Virus record (IMG/VR): IMGVR_UViG_3300042923_000474
Location: 167,725 to 231,724 of that record
DNA: 64,000 nucleotides
Strand: one strand, 5' to 3'
Position numbers and translations under genes: made by a program. The notes under the pieces were generated by a model. The model saw only the letters and a program-made list of their open reading frames with translations. It searched no databases and was not told the DNA's origin. Position 1 is the first letter of the stretch. The number at the start of each line of letters is the position of its first letter. Below are positions 40,787 through 54,313 of this stretch, piece after piece.

Positions 40787-41296
40787 ATGCCAAAACAATC
40801 CAAAATCTTCTACACATCCTGCATGGGGCAGGGGAGTGGAGAGTTCACCTTAGTTCAGGACTACACTGGACGAGGTGTTTACATCGGCAAGCGTAAGCCA
40901 GCTGACGAAAAAGAGCTGGCTCTCTACCATGAGCAATTGCGAGCCGACCACATGATCGAGCCACCTACCCAGTGTTGGGTCTGGATCATGCGCCCCATTG
41001 CGACGGGGGACCTTATCAATGAGGGTTCCACTATCGCACGAACAATGTACGACGCCATCGGTAGTCACATGGATGCCGACTGGAACAAGCGTAAGGCCAT
41101 TCCCTGCGAACAGCTGTGTTATGTAGGGAGCGACTTTGCGGGGAGATTAGATAAGGTGCGTCCGTTACTGAACGCATTTGATCGGGCAATCATTCGTGAG
41201 CAGTTAGCCAAACAACTGCTTTCCAATCTACCAGTTCATAGCCGGGGCATGTTCGACCGCTATCAACTGCAAAATCTCAGAGACCTAAGGGGGTAA
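40787..41296 (+). CDS. Hypothetical protein
   Basis: 169 aa ORF. Confidence 0.75.
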   Translation: MPKQSKIFYTSCMGQGSGEFTLVQDYTGRGVYIGKRKPADEKELALYHEQLRADHMIEPPTQCWVWIMRPIATGDLINEGSTIARTMYDAIGSHMDADWNKRKAIPCEQLCYVGSDFAGRLDKVRPLLNAFDRAIIREQLAKQLLSNLPVHSRGMFDRYQLQNLRDLRG

Positions 41297-41298
41297 CT

Positions 41299-42372
41299 GT
41301 GAAGCAAGCAGAATATCTGAATCTCATGCTGGGCGTTAAGTACCAGTTGGAGTCGGACGACATCAACCTGATCATTGCGATCGCGGCTATCTTGCGTGAT
41401 CGCAACATCAAGGTGTCGTTTGCATCGGCCCCGCTGTTCGATGAACTGAACGGCGATGAGTTCCGCAGTGAGCGTGCGCTGATCTACAAGATGGTCACTC
41501 AGGGTTTCCACTTCTGGGAAGTTACTCAGATGCTGGGCGGCATGGGTTCTGCATGGCATGCGATCCAGTACCTGCGCGAAGTCATGAATAGTAATGGCGG
41601 TACACCGTCGCTGCGTAAAGTGGCCATGGTCTTCGTCAGCGAGTGGCCGGTGCCAATGCCACCACCTGTGTCGGAATCCGACATGGCGCAGCCTGAGCGT
41701 CAGATCACGCCGGTTGAAGGCTACAAGGGCTGGTTGGTTACCGGCAAGATGGAACTCGAAGATGCAGACCACACCAAGCGCACCTTCGATCTGAACACCC
41801 AACCTGAAGGCGAAGAGGCGGCTCAAGAGCCAGCGGTTGTTCAGATTGCGCGCATGTTGCGTGTGACCTGGAATGCCGACAAAGGTGTCGTTGAACCTGA
41901 GCGTCTCGAAAAGATTGCCATGTTGTTGGGTCACATGCTGCTGTCTGAGCGTGAACACTTCATGGGCAAGCTGAAAGAAGCACAATCGGCAGCCAAACCT
42001 GAAGCACCTCTGATCTGGCCGAAGAACAAAGACCACTGGATCTTTGACCCTCGCCTGTCTGCGCTGAATGCTCCGATGCCACTCAACAACGACTTCCCTG
42101 CGCGTCAGCGTCTGACAGAAGTTGCTCGTGAAGCCGCTCGCTTTGCAGTATCGCGTGCCAGCGGTATGGGCACCAGCCGTGTGTTCAACATCGAAGGCTT
42201 TGTTGAGAACGTTGCCATCGGCCTGTTCGGTGACGGTACCAACGAGCACAACTTCGATTTCCGCACGCTGGTGTTTGACAAAGAAGTTGCAGCCGAAGCG
42301 CCGAAACCTGCTGAACCTGCTCCAGCACCTGCACCGGTTGAAACCGAAGCTCCAGCTGAAGTGGGAAAGTAG
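41299..42372 (+). CDS. Hypothetical protein, short (357 aa) form of candidate frameshifted gene
   Basis: Ends GTG GGA AAG TAG. Confidence 0.85.
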   Translation: MKQAEYLNLMLGVKYQLESDDINLIIAIAAILRDRNIKVSFASAPLFDELNGDEFRSERALIYKMVTQGFHFWEVTQMLGGMGSAWHAIQYLREVMNSNGGTPSLRKVAMVFVSEWPVPMPPPVSESDMAQPERQITPVEGYKGWLVTGKMELEDADHTKRTFDLNTQPEGEEAAQEPAVVQIARMLRVTWNADKGVVEPERLEKIAMLLGHMLLSEREHFMGKLKEAQSAAKPEAPLIWPKNKDHWIFDPRLSALNAPMPLNNDFPARQRLTEVAREAARFAVSRASGMGTSRVFNIEGFVENVAIGLFGDGTNEHNFDFRTLVFDKEVAAEAPKPAEPAPAPAPVETEAPAEVGK

Positions 42373-42420
42373 AAGCCGGCGTTGCGCCACAGCTTGCTTC
42401 CAAGTTAGCAGCGGCCGGCT
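42363..42420 (+). other. Candidate programmed -1 frameshift signal (G GGA AAG + stem-loop)
   Basis: Heptamer 42363-42369 in X XXY YYZ phase; AGCCGGC 42374-80 pairs with GCCGGCT 42414-20, with inner stems. Confidence 0.7.
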
Positions 42421-42611
42421 CGTTTCCTGTAGCACCGCAAGCCCCGGCAGAAGAAACTGTTCTGCCAGTCAGTGAACGTGGGGCACCTGCCAGCACGCCA
42501 TTGATCGAAAGACTGCAATCCCAAAAGACTGCAGCCAAACCCGTAGCAAAGAAACCTGCTGCAAAACCACGTCAGCCACGTAAACCGGCAGACAAAAAAC
42601 CTACCAAGTAA
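42363..42611 (+). CDS. -1 frame extension (80 aa Ala/Pro/Lys-rich tail) of 41299 gene
   Basis: Open from GGG AAA 42363 to TAA 42609-42611; no ATG/GTG; in-frame TGA at 42357; hairpin follows at 42619. Confidence 0.75.
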   Translation, partial: GKVEAGVAPQLASKLAAAGSFPVAPQAPAEETVLPVSERGAPASTPLIERLQSQKTAAKPVAKKPAAKPRQPRKPADKKPTK

Positions 42612-42618
42612 CACATCT

Positions 42619-42651
42619 GGCCTGCTCCCTGCCGGGAGTGGGCCTTATGCC
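42619..42651 (+). terminator. Hairpin terminator after frameshift extension
   Basis: GGCCTGCTCCC/GGGAGTGGGCC-TTATGCC. Confidence 0.75.
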
Positions 42652-42666
42652 ATCGGAGAGAAACAC

Positions 42667-43947
42667 ATGAACTCTACACTCAACAAAATTGCAGCGGGCG
42701 TTTACATCACTCAGCTGTTGTATCGTTGCCAGATTTCCAACATGGCACACCTGCTACCCGCCGGTGAAGAAACTGAATTCCGCAATGAGGTCTTCCACGG
42801 CGAGGTTGGTGAGCTGTACGGACCAAAGGCTGCCCAGTGCTTCAATACGGTCAGAGCGATTGCTGTGGGTCATCTGGGGCTCTTACAGGCTATCCGTCTG
42901 CACGCTGACCTCTTTACGCCGGGGGTGTTGGCAGTGGCTACCCGTCACTTGCTTGAAGAACCCGACATTGACTGGAACGATGTGGGCTGCCTACTGACAG
43001 GTACGGCTGAGCAGTTCAAGTTGGACAGCATATTGGCTGAGCACTTAGAACGTCCGCTTTGTCAGATGTCTGGCGATGCTGTCCGTGATGCGTTGAAACA
43101 AGCGGTGGGTATGTTTGAAAATGCTCGCAGCTATGACGAAACCTTTGTCAAGACATCGGTGTTCCGCTATGCCGATCTATGGACTCGGATGTTCCACAAT
43201 CCGCGGGAGTTGATGCGGGCGCTGGACGAGGTGGGCGTCAAGCAGGGTCCTGATGATTCCGAAGACGTCAATGCAATGGCCAACATCATGGGCGGTGAAC
43301 CCGATGGCGTTTTCGAGGCCTTCTGTATTCGTCACAGCCTGGGGTTGGAAACTGCCAAGGTCTGGGAAGAGCAAATGGTCACCTGGGGTTACCGCGAATA
43401 CGCAGGGGCTACTCGCGGCATGATGGCTGATGGCCGTGCCGAGTTCAAGACATTCATGGCCAGCGCAGTGGCGGCAGGCTACCCTGTCTACATTCAGGAT
43501 AAGCACCTGTCCGACTTCGAGGATCTGTTGCTGCGCATTCCTGGCTGCACCACGGATGAAGAACGCGACATGGTTGAGAACTTCATCTACTGCATCGCAC
43601 CGATCCTGTTCTTTGAACTGAGTGAGCACGGTCAGTACCGCAATGCGCGGTGGCGTGGTATCAGCGTGTCTTCAGATTACGACACAATGATCCGGGAGCT
43701 TGAGAACTACGAAGGTTCTGGCTGGTTGCCTCTGGTTCGTTTGCTGACTATGCGGTTCGCCAATCGTCGCTTTGACCGTCAAACTATCTTCAGCACCTAT
43801 GAAGAAGAGGTCAAGGAACAGATTGAACGCGCCACCCTAAATGCCAACGTGTCCCAAGCAACCCGTCGCCACACCTACTTGGTTCAGGAACTTCTGCGCG
43901 TCATTGAAGATGACATGTACGACATGAAACTCTTCGGTCACAACTAA
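42667..43947 (+). CDS. Hypothetical protein (426 aa)
   Basis: GGAG RBS; long ORF. Confidence 0.85.
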   Translation: MNSTLNKIAAGVYITQLLYRCQISNMAHLLPAGEETEFRNEVFHGEVGELYGPKAAQCFNTVRAIAVGHLGLLQAIRLHADLFTPGVLAVATRHLLEEPDIDWNDVGCLLTGTAEQFKLDSILAEHLERPLCQMSGDAVRDALKQAVGMFENARSYDETFVKTSVFRYADLWTRMFHNPRELMRALDEVGVKQGPDDSEDVNAMANIMGGEPDGVFEAFCIRHSLGLETAKVWEEQMVTWGYREYAGATRGMMADGRAEFKTFMASAVAAGYPVYIQDKHLSDFEDLLLRIPGCTTDEERDMVENFIYCIAPILFFELSEHGQYRNARWRGISVSSDYDTMIRELENYEGSGWLPLVRLLTMRFANRRFDRQTIFSTYEEEVKEQIERATLNANVSQATRRHTYLVQELLRVIEDDMYDMKLFGHN

Positions 43948-50178: not shown

Positions 50179-51000
50179 TCACAACAGTCCGCCGACAACG
50201 GATTGGATGTGATCCAGGTGCGACAGTGGGTCGACCAGAATGGAGATCTTCTGCCACTTGTTCATCTGCTCTTCGTAGAGTTCGTTGGCGTCTTGATAGC
50301 TATCAACGATTTCTTTGAAGCGGCCGATGGACATACCGCCTGCAATCTGCGCTTCATCCATTGGAATCACGATGTTGTTGTAGATGTAAGCCTTGACGGC
50401 AAACTCGCACAACTTCTTGAAGTGTTTCCAAGCAGCAGGGGGTACGTGGGAGAGGGTTGCATCGTTTTCCAGCTGGCAGTCCAGATACAGGGTACCGGCC
50501 AGGCGCAATGGAGAACGAATCATGATGGTGTTGTCGCCGATGATCTGGATATTGCTATCCGACATCAGAGGCATGGGATCGCGAGACTGCTTAACGGCGC
50601 GCATCGCATCCACCAACCCACTCGACGCACCAAACTGCATCGACACAGAACCACCCAATGCACCCGTTGGCGTACCGGTCACCATGGCATACACAGCCGT
50701 GATCGAGCGACCATTGGTGCGACTCTTGGGAATGGTCAGAACCAGGCTCCAGTCGTCTTGTTGCTCTTGCATCAGGCCGACCAGCGAAACCAGTTCACGT
50801 TGTCCACTGATCAGGTTGATACCCGGCAGAACACGGCCTTCAATCACCTTTTCACGGATGACGTGGTCGATGCTCACCACCGGGGCATTTCGGCGTCCCC
50901 AAGTTTCCCGGCGGATAAGATCATTCTGAAAAGCCTCCTTCAGGATCGGCATCGGAATGATGTGTTTCAATTCGTTGAGCGTGTGCTGAATCGCGTTCAT
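50179..51000 (-). CDS. Conserved phiKZ-like hypothetical protein divergent from phuZ
   Basis: 273 aa; IP..IL..AF, I..KVI..RVL, NIVI..D..GG...G.F..IVDSY pattern recalled from phiKZ-like phages. Confidence 0.75.
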   Translation of the reverse strand: MNAIQHTLNELKHIIPMPILKEAFQNDLIRRETWGRRNAPVVSIDHVIREKVIEGRVLPGINLISGQRELVSLVGLMQEQQDDWSLVLTIPKSRTNGRSITAVYAMVTGTPTGALGGSVSMQFGASSGLVDAMRAVKQSRDPMPLMSDSNIQIIGDNTIMIRSPLRLAGTLYLDCQLENDATLSHVPPAAWKHFKKLCEFAVKAYIYNNIVIPMDEAQIAGGMSIGRFKEIVDSYQDANELYEEQMNKWQKISILVDPLSHLDHIQSVVGGLL

Positions 51001-51082
51001 GATTTAAACTCGCAATGACCATTAGGTATTTATTAGCTAATACATGTTGATGAATACCATCTATCCCCAAAGGAGCAACACC

Positions 51083-52135
51083 GTGACTTCAAAAGTAAAC
51101 ATCCTGGCATGCGGCGGCTTCGGTCAAAACATCATGCTGCTGCTCGCCAAGCGTGAGTCTTTCGCATCCCTGGGTCAGGCGTTGAACCTGCATGCTTTCG
51201 ACACCTCCAAGTCGAACCTCAAGCGTTTCGCTGGTAGCGCTATCGAGTCCGCTGTCAAGAAGCACCTGGTAGAAGGCGCTGACGGTTCGGGTAAACTGCG
51301 TGCTGAAAACCACGAAGCCATCACTGCGCTCGTGACCGACGTGGTTAACAACAACGAGATCGAAGACGGCCTGACCATCATCGTCTCCTCGGCCTCCGGT
51401 GGTTCGGGTTCGAAGTTCGCTGACGACCTACACGAACAACTGGCCAAACGTGGTCGCCGTGTAATCTCCATGATCCTGGGCACCGACGAAGACAACGAAG
51501 CGCTGGGCAACACCCTGAAGACCGTCAAGACCTACCGCCACAAGGCCGGCCTGGGCGACAAGAACTTCGTCATGTTCTACGGCCAGAACCGTTTCCCGGT
51601 CGAAGGTCAGGAAGGCAAGACCTACATCGACGAGGCGTTGGCTGACGAGCTGTTCGTGACCAACCTGGAAGACATCCTGATGATTGGTCATCCAGAGAAT
51701 AACACTCTGGACACCAAAGATCAGCTGCGCTTCCTGAACTATCGCCTGGACAGCGAAGGTGGCCGTGAAGGTAAAGGTCAGCTGCGCTTCCTGTCGCTGA
51801 TCAGCCGTACTGAAAAGCAGGACTTCCCAACCGACGACGACGTCCCGGTTGCGGCACTGTCTCTGCTGGCCAAACACGGCATCACCCCGCAGTACGCAAC
51901 TGGCACCGGTTACTCCACTCGTGGCGTACTGGGTGAAAGCCTGTCGTTCGCTGACGGCGTGGTTGAAGTTCAGTTCCAACTCTTCTCCGGCCGCACCAGC
52001 AAGCTGGCTAACCAGCTGGACAAGCAGCAGAAGCTGTACGACACCATCCGCGCCAAGCAAGACGAGAACAGCTCCGGCGATGACTTCAAGCGTTCCGACA
52101 AGGACGTGGTCACCGACAGCGGTTCGTTCCTGTAA
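51083..52135 (+). CDS. phuZ: Phage tubulin PhuZ
   Basis: GTG start after AAGGAG; ACGGFGQNI, DTSKSN, ADGSGKLR, SASGGSGS, acidic C-tail DVVTDSGSFL. Confidence 0.92.
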   Translation: MTSKVNILACGGFGQNIMLLLAKRESFASLGQALNLHAFDTSKSNLKRFAGSAIESAVKKHLVEGADGSGKLRAENHEAITALVTDVVNNNEIEDGLTIIVSSASGGSGSKFADDLHEQLAKRGRRVISMILGTDEDNEALGNTLKTVKTYRHKAGLGDKNFVMFYGQNRFPVEGQEGKTYIDEALADELFVTNLEDILMIGHPENNTLDTKDQLRFLNYRLDSEGGREGKGQLRFLSLISRTEKQDFPTDDDVPVAALSLLAKHGITPQYATGTGYSTRGVLGESLSFADGVVEVQFQLFSGRTSKLANQLDKQQKLYDTIRAKQDENSSGDDFKRSDKDVVTDSGSFL

Positions 52136-52177: not shown

Positions 52178-52296
52178 TTACTTCTTTTTTTGTTAAACCA
52201 CACAGGGGCTACTAATGTATTGAGGTTCATGCCGACTCGGTCAGGGGTTAGCAACTGGTTTTCACGGGCCAGGGATTTCAAGCACTTTAGATTCCG

Positions 52297-52324
52297 CCTC
52301 CCTTCTGGGGAGGTTTTTTTTTTT
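52297..52324 (+). terminator. Canonical intrinsic terminator
   Basis: CCTCCC/GGGAGG followed by T11. Confidence 0.75.
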
Positions 52325-52351: not shown

Positions 52352-52702
52352 ATGTCCTACGTTCTTACTGGCAATTCCAACCCACATTTCCCGCTGCGTG
52401 CCCTAATTTTGGCACCGGCTGTACAGTCCCGCTTCGTGTTGAAGATCGATTCTGAGGGCAAGGTCGAGAAGTTACTGCGCTTCATCGGTACCGCTCAAGT
52501 GGAAGCCGGCGACATTGCCACCCACAACAAAGAAACCACCACCCGTTATCAGGTGGCTCGTTTCGAGATCCTGGAAGATAGTCAGGAAGCCTTCTTCGAA
52601 CCCGGCGAGACCTTCGATATCGAGATCACTGAATTGACGCTGGAGAACGAGTTGTTCGCGTTCATTCCTCGCATCATCAAGCAGGATCTTCAGGAGGCGT
52701 AA
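52352..52702 (+). CDS. Hypothetical protein
   Basis: Start ATG 52352 downstream of U-tract terminator. Confidence 0.8.
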   Translation: MSYVLTGNSNPHFPLRALILAPAVQSRFVLKIDSEGKVEKLLRFIGTAQVEAGDIATHNKETTTRYQVARFEILEDSQEAFFEPGETFDIEITELTLENELFAFIPRIIKQDLQEA

Positions 52703-53058
52703 TGCTCCCACGCATGGTCTTTGGCCGTGACGAACACGGCAACGAAACAACACCGCTCACCCTGGACTTCAGCAAACAGTTCACGCTGGGTCAATTAGTG
52801 TTGGCCAGTCACGTACCTTCGACTATGATGTTCAAGGTACAGACCAATGGTCGGCGTGGTGTTATGATGCAGTACGAAGGTACCTGGCCGATGCGTCGTA
52901 CCGGCGCAGATGAGCCCGGCATCATTAACAACTACGCACACTTCACACCGTATATCCGTCAGGGTCCCGGTGTGTGGGTATTATCCAACAGTGAGACGAT
53001 CTCTGTCCCACTTAGCAAAGAAGAGCTGATGAGCCTTTATCAGTTCTACAAACTCTGA
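52702..53058 (+). CDS. Hypothetical protein
   Basis: TAATG coupling, AGGAGG RBS. Confidence 0.8.
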   Translation: MLPRMVFGRDEHGNETTPLTLDFSKQFTLGQLVLASHVPSTMMFKVQTNGRRGVMMQYEGTWPMRRTGADEPGIINNYAHFTPYIRQGPGVWVLSNSETISVPLSKEELMSLYQFYKL

Positions 53059-53070
53059 AGGAGTAGTACG

Positions 53071-53541
53071 ATGGATTTGTTTCAAGGCACTAAGATGATT
53101 GCCGCTCAGGCAATGACTCTGGGCGAATACAACAAGTACCGCGGCTGGGAAATCCCTGCCAACGAAGACCCGGCCCGTGAAGGTTACCTGGTCGAGTACA
53201 TCGGCACCAACGACTCCAACCACCCCGAGCACAAGAGCTACATCTCCTGGTCGCCAAAGCAGCAGTTCGACGACAGTCATGTTCGCGCTGGCGGTCCAGA
53301 AACTCTGGCATACGTGCCATTCATCCAGCGCCTGCTCGGCGAGCAGGCCCGCAACTGCGACAGCCTGGAAAAGCTGCAGACCTTCCAGAAGACCGAGCTG
53401 TGGACCCAGCTGCCAGACGACGTGCGTGAACTGATGGCTCGTCAAGAGCAGGTCATGTTCGAGCTGCAGCACGTACTCAACGATCGTGTCGAACTGGCTC
53501 TCGACGTCAAGGTTCACAATAAAGAAGTGAGCCCTCAATGA
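53071..53541 (+). CDS. Two-domain protein, candidate nucleotide-signal sponge
   Basis: FQGTKMIAAQAMT..YNKYRGW..EGYLVEY..SWSPKQQF plus helical PFIQRL..E..LEKL..Q..VM..VL..R. Confidence 0.7.
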   Translation: MDLFQGTKMIAAQAMTLGEYNKYRGWEIPANEDPAREGYLVEYIGTNDSNHPEHKSYISWSPKQQFDDSHVRAGGPETLAYVPFIQRLLGEQARNCDSLEKLQTFQKTELWTQLPDDVRELMARQEQVMFELQHVLNDRVELALDVKVHNKEVSPQ

Positions 53542-53951
53542 AATACATTCTGATGCTGGGTTGTTTCTCGGCAGTCCCCATGGTCAAGTCCGACTGGGAC
53601 CAGAAGAATGGTTTCATTACCGATGCCGACGCCGCCGTCGAAGGCTACGAATTGACCAACGTAGCCACCGGCCGGCGTCAGTGGTTGCCACAGCAAGAAG
53701 TGGACGGCACCAGCACCGCGCTGCCAGATAACTTCATCGACCATCGTCCAGAAGACCGCCCTTGGATTGCCGAACGTGCCTTGCATGCCCAGCGTATTCA
53801 AGAGCTGGAAGCTGAGATGGCCCGCCGCAAATTGCACTACCAGCAGAACGGCACGACCGACACGTTTGCCCAGAACTTCATCGAGCCGCACATTGAAGCG
53901 CTGCGCCAGCGAGTAGCGGAATTGACCGATGCGATTCGTTGCATCGATTGA
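53538..53951 (+). CDS. Divergent paralogue of upstream two-domain protein
   Basis: MKYI..AVPM..EGYEL..QWLPQQ then PWIAER..IQELE..LRQRV. Confidence 0.65.
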   Translation: MKYILMLGCFSAVPMVKSDWDQKNGFITDADAAVEGYELTNVATGRRQWLPQQEVDGTSTALPDNFIDHRPEDRPWIAERALHAQRIQELEAEMARRKLHYQQNGTTDTFAQNFIEPHIEALRQRVAELTDAIRCID

Positions 53952-54052: not shown

Positions 54053-54082
54053 GCCCACCCTTCGGGGTGGGCTTTTATGCCC
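54053..54082 (+). terminator. Hairpin terminator
   Basis: GCCCACCC-TTCG-GGGTGGGC-TTTTATGCC. Confidence 0.8.
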
Positions 54083-54097
54083 CCACCCGGAGCCCCC

Positions 54098-54313
54098 ATG
54101 CCTGGTATACTGCGCTGCGTGAAATGCAATCACATTGACCACATGGACATCCGCTACCCCCATGGCGGAGACATGGATGTGAACCTGCACCCCGTTCCAC
54201 TGATCTGTGCAATCTGTGCAGGTCTTCCTTGGCACAACCGATTAACTCGTCAAGTGTACAACCCCGAGTACCACGACGTCGTTAATCCACCTACTTCAAA
54301 TCCTACGACCTGA
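54098..54313 (+). CDS. Small zinc-ribbon protein
   Basis: Start ATG 54098 (GGAG); CVKC...CAIC...WH. Confidence 0.75.
   Translation: MPGILRCVKCNHIDHMDIRYPHGGDMDVNLHPVPLICAICAGLPWHNRLTRQVYNPEYHDVVNPPTSNPTT

What the first reader, a model, noticed from the sequence alone, without database searches (positions are those of the whole stretch)
53071..53951. Tandem conserved plus divergent pair of two-domain candidate immune-signal sponges next to phuZ
Seen: 53071-53541 has a GTK.I.A..MT...GW...EGYLV.Y...SWSPK..F domain joined to a helical hairpin (QRL..E...LEKL..F...L..Q..M...L..R). The coupled downstream gene has the same two-domain skeleton with most conserved residues changed (QWLPQQ for SWSPKQ). 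From memory the first domain is often fused to Tad1- and Tad2-type sponges, and the second resembles the crAss001_48-like family proposed or shown to bind signals; not verified here. Inference: a dual sponge plus a neofunctionalised copy or hetero-oligomer that extends ligand range.
Basis: partly seen in the sequence, partly recalled or inferred. Interest (0 to 1): 0.6.

Follow-up and report, generated by a model that had tools for sequence, protein, structure and literature searches.

The report
Sequestin sponge plus divergent paralogue pair
Just downstream of its tubulin gene, an uncultured jumbo phage carries a recognisable anti-Thoeris 'Sequestin' signal-sponge gene, followed by an old, strongly diverged copy of the same two-domain protein; the first gene is an ordinary member of a known family, while the function of the second is still open.

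Summary
Gene A (53071-53541, 156 aa) and gene B (53538-53951, 137 aa) overlap by ATGA. They lie in a terminator-bracketed four-gene unit about 1 kb after phuZ.

A's C-terminal half is a Pfam PF21825 (Sequestin) domain scoring above the curated cut-off. All four published ligand residues are present with the published spacing (R87, E91, Q125, R139). Its N-terminal 75 residues are not Acb4, Tad1 or Tad2. They form an unnamed beta-rich module that precedes Tad2, Sequestin, Acb4, Acb2/Tad1-hairpin and RyR-Tad domains in hundreds of phages. In the one published experiment this module was a strand-swapped dimeriser with no anti-Thoeris activity of its own.

B has no family hit and no BLASTP similarity to A, but it is a real paralogue. 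The evidence is profile-profile P 5e-7 over the full length, the same order of secondary-structure elements in an independent AlphaFold model, and Foldseek TM 0.76 to an N-module+Sequestin protein. Only 6 of 23 conserved N-module positions survive in B.

The pair is ancestral in this phage clade, but three relatives keep B without A, so B does not need A. B's hairpin is under strong purifying selection (dN/dS 0.055).

Verdict: A is a known kind of anti-Thoeris sponge. B is a rare, probably retuned derivative. The 'dual sponge' and hetero-oligomer readings are unproven.

The parts
51044..52135 (+). phuZ (phage tubulin), the landmark gene upstream
   Evidence: phrog_4733 'tubulin PhuZ', E 7.5e-36. 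It is 26-32% identical to PhuZ of Erwinia, Ralstonia, Serratia and Xanthomonas jumbo phages.
52296..52314 (+). terminator-like hairpin followed by a T10 run, after phuZ; upstream boundary of the small operon
   Evidence: Consensus scan: 8-pair stem, then TTTTTTTTTT. This is a pattern match only.
52352..52702 (+). orf116, first gene of the unit; function unknown
   Evidence: The start is placed at the Met that homologues in L003, L092, L094, L095 and L096 share. No Pfam, PHROG or NCBIfam hit.
52702..53058 (+). orf118, conserved syntenic gene; function unknown
   Evidence: Homologues occupy the same position in L003, L092, L094 and L096. dN/dS is 0.08. No family hit.
53071..53541 (+). gene A: N-module + Sequestin fusion, 156 aa
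   Evidence: ORF. An AAGGAG sequence lies 8 nt upstream. The AlphaFold2 model has pLDDT 95.1 and pTM 0.85.
53071..53304 (+). A residues 1-78: unnamed beta-rich N-terminal module (RyR-Tad-N-like, phrog_872)
   Evidence: phrog_872, E 1e-17. No Pfam hit. hhalign to the CB1 gp68 N-domain gives 97.7% probability, P 1.4e-12. More than 545 IMG/VR loci carry it. dN/dS is 0.09.
53317..53493 (+). A residues 83-141: Sequestin (PF21825) helical hairpin with R87, E91, Q125 and R139
   Evidence: PF21825 at 36.1 bits, E 5.9e-9, and 37.9 bits in the genome scan. The tetrad is invariant in the A family. Its spacing 4/34/14 equals that of SequestinB R7/E11/Q45/R59.
53538..53541 (+). ATGA stop/start overlap coupling A to B
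   Evidence: Read directly from the sequence.
53538..53951 (+). gene B: diverged paralogue with the same two-domain fold, 137 aa
   Evidence: ORF. The AlphaFold2 model has pLDDT 89.9. Homology to A is shown. Only 4 representative clusters were found among 1.84 billion proteins.
53538..53723 (+). B residues 1-62: degenerate N-module, fast-evolving
   Evidence: hhalign of the deep N-module profile against the B family gives P 2.7e-5. Only 6 of 23 conserved positions are kept. dN is 0.37 against the sister phage, with dS saturated.
53748..53939 (+). B residues 71-134: long helical hairpin with its own invariant polar set (E79, Q85, R86, E89, R97, N104, D108); D137 is also invariant but lies beyond residue 134, in the last codon before the stop (53946-53948), outside this part
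   Evidence: DSSP on the model gives H71-104 and H109-134. dN/dS is 0.055. There is no PF21825 hit.
54053..54072 (+). terminator-like GC hairpin plus TTTT; downstream boundary of the unit
   Evidence: Consensus scan: 8 pairs, 7 of them G-C. This is a pattern match only.

Best explanation
Gene A is an anti-Thoeris signal sponge of the Sequestin family.
- Its C-terminal helical hairpin pairs antiparallel with a second copy. It traps the TIR-made signal 3'cADPR (1''-3' gcADPR) in two interface pockets lined by R87, E91 and R139 of one chain and Q125 of the other. The Thoeris effector ThsA is then never switched on.
- Its N-terminal 75-residue module is the common N-terminal partner of many phage sponge domains. 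It most likely acts as a strand-swapped dimerisation module that holds the sponge in its oligomeric form.
- The domain assignments are shown here. The binding and oligomer steps are inferred from published work on relatives.

Gene B is an ancient paralogue of A that has lived next to it since before this jumbo-phage clade diversified.
- It keeps the fold, has lost the N-module's conserved motif, and has rebuilt the hairpin.
- The rebuilt hairpin has a longer first helix, lacks about one heptad of the second helix, and has a new invariant polar set, while the Glu equivalent to E91 is kept.
- The hairpin is under strong purifying selection, and B persists where A has been lost. B therefore works on its own.
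- B is most likely a homodimeric binder with a retuned pocket for a different small signal, less likely for a protein. This last step is inference only.
For: For A:
- PF21825 scores above the cut-off.
- The R/E/Q/R tetrad is invariant in the family and has the same spacing as the mutationally tested SequestinB residues.
- The model of the fold is confident.
- Published members, including the two-domain Ab09 gp59, bind gcADPR, form dimers through the Sequestin domain and defeat type I Thoeris.

For the N-module:
- It is homologous to the RyR Tad N-domain, whose crystal structure shows a beta1-swapped dimer.
- It is fused to Tad2, Sequestin, Acb4 and an Acb2/Tad1 hairpin and also stands alone.

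For B:
- Homology to A by profiles, by BLASTP between the outgroup pair (E 0.012, colinear across the domain junction), by fold and by position.
- The A+B tandem occurs in the window, in L003 and in the distant L096. B occurs alone in L092, L094 and L095.
- A-type genes of the clade are monophyletic (91/99 support), so the tandem is ancestral and A was lost repeatedly.
- Selection is reciprocal. dN/dS is 0.09 for A's N-module and 0.53 for A's hairpin. It is 0.055 for B's hairpin, while B's N-module has dN 0.37.
- The intact tandem is present in contigs from several independent runs.
Against: - No ligand, oligomer or anti-defence activity was or could be measured here.
- The Sequestin HMM and profile do not detect B's hairpin on their own (Pfam E > 1; hmmsearch below shuffles; hhalign P 0.14).
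- The mapping of the Gln and second Arg onto B (H118, R125) rests on a low-confidence stretch of alignment. These residues are not conserved in the more distant B homologues.
- B is kept in every relative examined while A is dispensable. This would also suit a non-defence, housekeeping role.
- Neither fold has a solved structure in the PDB copy.
Confidence: 0.6

Rival explanations
1. Dual sponge. The N-terminal module of A is itself a second ligand-binding sponge domain, so A mops up two different immune signals.
For: - The module is attached to five different sponge families and also occurs alone as 75-80-aa proteins. The same kind of guilt-by-fusion logic uncovered Sequestin.
- Its invariant positions are rich in aromatic and charged residues: Y20, N21, R24, W26, E32, Y39 and W60.
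- It is under strong purifying selection (dN/dS 0.09). That is more than a plain dimeriser would be expected to need.
Against: The only experiment on it found that RyR Tad residues 1-86 have no anti-Thoeris-I activity, and the structure shows a strand-swapped dimer interface. No pocket or ligand is known, and only one defence system was tested.
Confidence: 0.25
2. Hetero-oligomer. A and B co-assemble through their homologous domains into a mixed sponge with non-equivalent pockets.
For: - Translational coupling by ATGA.
- Tight adjacency in three lineages.
- Shared fold in both dimer-forming domains.
Against: - B occurs without A in L092, L094 and L095, so co-assembly cannot be required.
- The N-module interface residues are largely replaced in B (6 of 23 kept).
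- The hairpins differ in helix length.
- The two proteins show opposite selection patterns, not co-variation.
Confidence: 0.12
3. B is not a counter-defence protein. It is a clade-specific housekeeping or regulatory coiled-coil protein that merely descends from a sponge-like ancestor.
For: - B is present at the same position in all six related genomes examined, while A comes and goes.
- It sits in a conserved block with phuZ, orf116 and orf118.
- Its hairpin is nearly invariant among close relatives.
- It has no family hit.
Against: - Its only detectable kin are sponge-domain fusions.
- The invariant hairpin residues are polar or charged, not a simple hydrophobic heptad.
- The family is confined to one small clade, as accessory genes often are.
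Confidence: 0.25

Closest known systems
Sequestin family (Pfam PF21825, 'crAss001_48'); SequestinA/B, T4 Y16O (bioRxiv 10.1101/2025.07.12.664507)
   Same: A residues 83-141 match the family model above the cut-off. They carry the R/E/Q/R residues with SequestinB's spacing, and they form a helical hairpin.
   Different: Most family members are stand-alone proteins of 60-80 aa, whereas A carries an extra N-terminal module. B has the hairpin shape but fails the family model and lacks most of the tetrad.
Pseudomonas phage Ab09 gp59, Acb4-Sequestin fusion (bioRxiv 10.64898/2026.06.04.730250)
   Same: Same size (147 aa against 156 aa) and same layout: an N-terminal oligomerising domain followed by a C-terminal Sequestin. 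It has been shown to bind gcADPR tightly and to defeat type I Thoeris.
   Different: Its N-terminal half is PF13876 (Acb4), a cGAMP-binding tetramer. A's N-terminal half is not PF13876, and BLASTP of A against gp59 finds nothing.
Pectobacterium phage CB1 gp68, 'RyR Tad' (same preprint)
   Same: Its N-terminal domain is homologous to A's N-module (hhalign 97.7%, P 1.4e-12). It is a two-domain dimeric gcADPR sponge in which both domains contribute to the dimer.
   Different: Its ligand-binding C-terminal domain is a ryanodine-receptor Repeat12-like helical domain, not a Sequestin hairpin.
Pseudomonas jumbo phage pPa_SNUABM_DT01 protein QTH80377.1 (263 aa)
   Same: It is the best match to A among sequenced phages (42% identity over 93% of A). 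It has the N-module plus PF21825 and comes from a jumbo phage. A 263-aa BFVD entry, probably this protein, is the top structural match of B.
   Different: It carries a third, beta-rich C-terminal domain. Its annotated neighbours give no sign of a B-like gene, though they were not compared with B. The identity of the BFVD entry with this protein was not verified.

Membership tests
Sequestin (PF21825), gene A | Match to the family profile above Pfam's gathering score | tested here: met
   36.1 bits against 24.8, E 5.9e-9, residues 83-141 on profile positions 2-60 of 61. 37.9 bits in the six-frame genome scan.
Sequestin (PF21825), gene A | Ligand-contact residues: Arg and Glu on helix 1, Gln and Arg on helix 2 (SequestinA R8/E12/Q47/R61; SequestinB R7/E11/Q45/R59) | tested here: met
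   R87, E91, Q125 and R139 have spacing 4/34/14, identical to SequestinB. All four are invariant in the A family and conserved in other N-module+Sequestin fusions.
Sequestin (PF21825), gene A | Short all-helical hairpin fold | tested here: met
   AlphaFold2 gives H83-105 and H116-150, with pLDDT about 98 over this part.
Sequestin (PF21825), gene A | Antiparallel homodimer with two interface pockets; binds 3'cADPR; inhibits type I Thoeris | not testable with these tools
These properties are known only for relatives.
Sequestin (PF21825), gene B | Match to the family profile | tested here: not met
   No PF21825 hit at E <= 1. My own Sequestin HMM scores B below shuffled controls. hhalign of the Sequestin profile alone gives P 0.14.
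Sequestin (PF21825), gene B | Helical hairpin fold placed after the N-module | tested here: met
   H71-104 and H109-134. TM 0.76 to an N-module+Sequestin-type viral protein. The top Atlas cluster is 100% PF21825, TM 0.53. The full-length profile alignment gives P 5.3e-7.
Sequestin (PF21825), gene B | R/E/Q/R ligand tetrad | tested here: inconclusive
   E79 aligns with E91 in three independent alignments and is invariant. The first Arg is replaced by P75. The Gln and second Arg map to H118 and R125 only in a low-confidence stretch containing a 7-residue gap, and R125 is not kept in P0015-P0017.
N-terminal module (RyR-Tad-N-like, phrog_872; no Pfam entry) | Profile similarity and the conserved YN.YRGW / GYLVEY / ISWSP motifs | tested here: met
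   For A: phrog_872 at E 1e-17, all invariant columns present, and hhalign to gp68 at 97.7%. For B: the weaker signal is P 2.7e-5, and 6 of 23 conserved positions are kept.
N-terminal module (RyR-Tad-N-like) | Strand-swapped dimer forming a five-stranded sheet | not tested
   The monomer models show five strands and two helices in both A and B. Swapping can only be seen in a dimer structure. It is published for gp68.
Acb4 (PF13876) | Match to the family profile | tested here: not met
   No hit for A, for A residues 1-80 or for B. In proteins that carry both, PF13876 covers only the part behind the N-module (P0006 residues 79-151, P0010 residues 75-150). There is no BLASTP similarity to Ab09 gp59.
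Tad2 (PF11195) and Tad1/Acb2 | Match to the family profile | tested here: not met
   No hit in A or B. These domains occur only as fusion partners of the N-module in other phages.

The most novel reading that the evidence does not exclude
The widespread N-terminal module is itself an undiscovered anti-defence domain that binds an immune signal or a host sensor not yet assigned to any sponge. In addition, B is a jumbo-phage-specific Sequestin derivative whose rebuilt pocket captures a signal outside the range of all described sponge families. Under this reading the A-B locus would neutralise three signals.
Probability: 0.15. Interest if true: 0.75.

Novelty: new variant of a known kind. Interest (0 to 1): 0.42.

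Why it matters
Nucleus-forming jumbo phages shield their DNA from nucleases. They remain exposed to cytoplasmic abortive-infection signalling such as Thoeris, so a Sequestin sponge in such a phage is a sensible counter-measure, if an unsurprising one.

Two things are worth a bench look:
- The N-terminal module precedes at least five different sponge families in hundreds of phages and still has no known ligand. This locus supplies both a canonical copy and a naturally degenerate copy for comparison.
- B shows what a Sequestin-type hairpin becomes after long independent evolution under strong constraint. If B binds a different signal, it would extend the family's ligand range and give a handle on how sponge specificity is retuned.

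Tried and rejected
- Complex prediction of A with B gave no answer (score 0.00, controls not run). It is not evidence for or against binding.
- Foldseek of both models against the PDB found nothing at E <= 0.001. There were only weak, shared rows to CarD/Mfd Tudor-like domains and SH3 domains. I do not build on these.
- VIA-align wide search of A returned only generic helical hairpins (Z about 8-9). It did not test the N-module.
- Sequence and profile searches of the PDB found nothing relevant.
- Megablast of the locus and tblastn of B against sequenced phages found no match.
- PADLOC and NCBIfam gave no hits.
- The idea that A is an Acb4-Sequestin fusion like Ab09 gp59 was rejected.
- The idea that B's MKYILMLGC start is a lipoprotein signal was rejected. 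The segment is too short, it is modelled as strands 1-2 of the domain, and it aligns with the same strands of A.
- The idea that orf118 is a third paralogue was not supported. It shares only a short GxxVTP-like stretch with distant B homologues, and the Atlas search gave no lead.
- The idea that DT01's extra C-terminal half is a fused B was rejected on reading the sequence.
- Searches of the papers library for a named function of the N-module found only the RyR Tad preprint.

Full report
**What is there.**
The window is the last 64 kb of a 231,724-bp virus record with direct terminal repeats. It is a jumbo phage carrying a PhuZ tubulin gene at 51044-52135 (phrog_4733, E 7.5e-36). PhuZ is only 26-32% identical to that of any sequenced phage, and the locus has no nucleotide match among sequenced phages.

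Two terminator-like hairpins on the + strand, at 52296-52314 and 54053-54072, bracket four same-strand genes:
- orf116, 52352-52702
- orf118, 52702-53058
- gene A, 53071-53541 (156 aa)
- gene B, 53538-53951 (137 aa)

A is preceded by AAGGAG, and A's stop overlaps B's start as ATGA. GC content is even across the unit.

**Gene A.**
Residues 83-141 match Pfam PF21825 (crAss001_48) at 36.1 bits against a cut-off of 24.8. This is the only such match in the genome.

PF21825 is now called Sequestin. Members bind 3'cADPR in two pockets at the interface of an antiparallel dimer and cancel type I Thoeris. In SequestinA and SequestinB the Glu, Gln and second Arg are essential. A has R87, E91, Q125 and R139, with spacing 4/34/14, exactly that of SequestinB R7/E11/Q45/R59. 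All four residues are invariant in A's family. The AlphaFold2 model (pLDDT 95.1) shows the expected hairpin, H83-105 and H116-150.

**The N-terminal module.**
Residues 1-78 have no Pfam or NCBIfam entry but match phrog_872 at E 1e-17.

The module is not Acb4. In proteins that carry both, PF13876 covers only the part behind it. The experimentally studied Acb4-Sequestin fusion Ab09 gp59 has PF13876 in its N-terminal half and shows no BLASTP similarity to A.

The module is very common, with more than 545 confirmed IMG/VR loci. Among 67 non-redundant ORFs taken from the best 80 loci, the partner domains were:

| Partner domain | ORFs |
|---|---|
| Tad2 | 44 |
| Sequestin | 20 |
| Acb4 | 4 |
| Acb2/Tad1 hairpin | 1 |

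Triple fusions and stand-alone versions of 75-80 aa also exist.

The module is also the N-terminal domain of CB1 gp68, 'RyR Tad' (hhalign 97.7%, P 1.4e-12). For gp68 a 2026 preprint reports three things. [quoted passage not shown] Residues 1-86 alone have no anti-Thoeris-I activity. In the crystal the domain forms a beta1-swapped dimer.

**Gene B.**
B has no Pfam, PHROG, PADLOC or NCBIfam hit. BLASTP against A finds nothing and tblastn against sequenced phages finds nothing. An exhaustive HMMER scan of 1.84 billion representatives found only four clusters.

B is nevertheless a paralogue of A. The evidence:
1. Profile-profile comparison improves as the profiles deepen. The values are P 0.0029, P 2.7e-5 for the N-module alone, P 2.7e-6, and P 5.3e-7 with 128 colinear columns.
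2. In the most distant relative, L096, the two neighbours align by plain BLASTP across the domain junction (E 0.012).
3. B's AlphaFold2 model was built from eight B-family rows only, yet it has pLDDT 89.9 and the same order of elements as A.
4. That model's best viral match is a 263-aa N-module+Sequestin-type protein (E 4.1e-5, TM 0.76).
5. Its best ESM-Atlas cluster is 100% PF21825, followed by Tad2 and Acb4/Sequestin fusions that share only the N-module.

The divergence is deep. B keeps 6 of 23 conserved N-module positions and lacks the 9-residue NHP loop. In the hairpin, helix 1 is about 11 residues longer and the short middle helix is missing. The invariant Glu is kept (E79 aligns with E91), and the first Arg is replaced by Pro (P75). 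The Gln and second Arg map to H118 and R125 only across a 7-residue gap in a low-confidence stretch. The Sequestin profile alone does not recognise this hairpin. B's family has its own invariant polar set: E79, Q85, R86, E89, R97, N104, D108 and the C-terminal D137.

**History and selection.**
The layout of the locus in related contigs is as follows:

| Contig | Layout after phuZ |
|---|---|
| Window | orf116, orf118, A, B |
| L003 (sister phage, 230,984 bp) | same block, A, B |
| L096 (distant relative, 231,819 bp) | same block; A' (156 aa, PF21825), B' (154 aa) |
| L092 | orf118, then B directly; no A |
| L094 | orf118, then B directly; no A |
| L095 | one in-frame fusion of the first ~18 codons of orf118 to a B-type gene; no A |

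A-type genes of this clade form one group (UFboot 91, SH-aLRT 99). The simplest reading is therefore an ancestral A-B tandem with repeated loss of A. B does not need A.

Between the window and L003, the selection patterns are reciprocal:

| Part | Measure |
|---|---|
| A, N-module | dN/dS 0.09 |
| A, hairpin | dN/dS 0.53 |
| B, hairpin | dN/dS 0.055 |
| B, N-module | dN 0.37, dS saturated |

Contigs from soil and wastewater metagenomes and two other labelled sources carry the tandem intact at 95-99% identity. Their differences fall mostly at third codon positions. No run could be shown to be RNA, so expression is untested.

**How it most likely works.**
A (about 0.8): a Sequestin-type sponge for 1''-3' gcADPR, held as a dimer or tetramer with help from the N-module. 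It blunts type I Thoeris, a cytoplasmic NAD-depleting defence that a phage nucleus cannot exclude. The domain assignments are shown here. Binding and oligomerisation are inferred from relatives.

B (about 0.35-0.4 for this particular reading): an independent homodimeric binder whose rebuilt, strongly constrained hairpin recognises a different ligand.

Rivals:
- The N-module is a second sponge, 0.25.
- A and B form an obligatory or facultative heteromer, 0.12. The single complex job gave no verdict and counts for nothing.
- B is a non-defence core protein of this clade, 0.25.

**Comparison and novelty.**
A is a new member of a known kind. Sequestin fusions are described, and an N-module+Sequestin architecture is common in databases. 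B, together with the conserved canonical-plus-degenerate tandem in a jumbo-phage clade, is a new variant of that kind. Nothing here requires a new category.

**Limits.**
- No multimer or ligand modelling was available.
- The N-module could not be folded alone for a fold search.
- The BFVD top hit has no name in the tables at hand. Its identity with the DT01 protein is inferred from its length only.
- Terminators and the ribosome-binding site are pattern matches.

Noticed in passing
L095:3001-3357 (protein P0015), compared with window 52702-53058 and 53538-53951: In one related phage the first ~18 codons of orf118 are fused in frame to a B-type gene. The rest of orf118 and any A gene are absent. 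This is a natural deletion or recombination at a short shared GxEVTP-like stretch.
   Followed up: partly
window 52449-52610 (inside orf116): In contigs of two other runs (X3, X4), which are otherwise 98-99% identical, a 160-bp segment is replaced by 157 unrelated letters. This is a small hypervariable cassette in the first gene of the unit.
   Followed up: no
window 54098-54313 (+): A 71-aa ORF lies just after the terminator. It has two CxxC pairs (zinc-ribbon-like) and is conserved at the same place in L092 and L095. It has no annotation.
   Followed up: no
window 53502-53534 (A residues about 145-155): The C-terminal tail of A is length-variable. Relatives have tails 6-8 residues shorter (P0001-P0005), and one strain in run X7 shows a string of small deletions here. 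The tail is modelled with low confidence (pLDDT 53-84).
   Followed up: partly
L015:2501-3031; P0008; L084:2501-3025; L087:82-678; L002:5992-6780: The N-module also precedes several other domains. These are an Acb2/Tad1-hairpin domain (probably L015), a 150-aa Cys-rich unknown domain (P0008), extended or unassigned C-terminal parts (L084, L087), and in jumbo phage DT01 a third beta-rich domain behind Sequestin. The unassigned partners are candidate new sponge or anti-defence domains by the fusion logic.
   Followed up: partly
window 50179-51000 (-): A 273-aa gene (Pfam DUF7484 in the relatives) is divergently oriented from phuZ and is syntenic in all related contigs.
   Followed up: no
L008 (Klebsiella phage KP8 36396-37467) and L001 (Ab09 41150-42952): In N4-like phages the N-module+Tad2 gene sits beside an Acb4 gene close to the virion RNA polymerase gene. 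This is the published anti-signalling hotspot. In the jumbo phage the equivalent genes sit beside phuZ instead.
   Followed up: partly
BFVD hits of B's model: PhiPA3 gp128, phiKZ gp023, Psa21, PaBG, Serratia phage Moabite DUF1653 protein: Several small proteins of other jumbo phages appear as weak structural matches (probability up to 0.94, TM about 0.3). They may be further degenerate relatives or may be chance hits.
   Followed up: no
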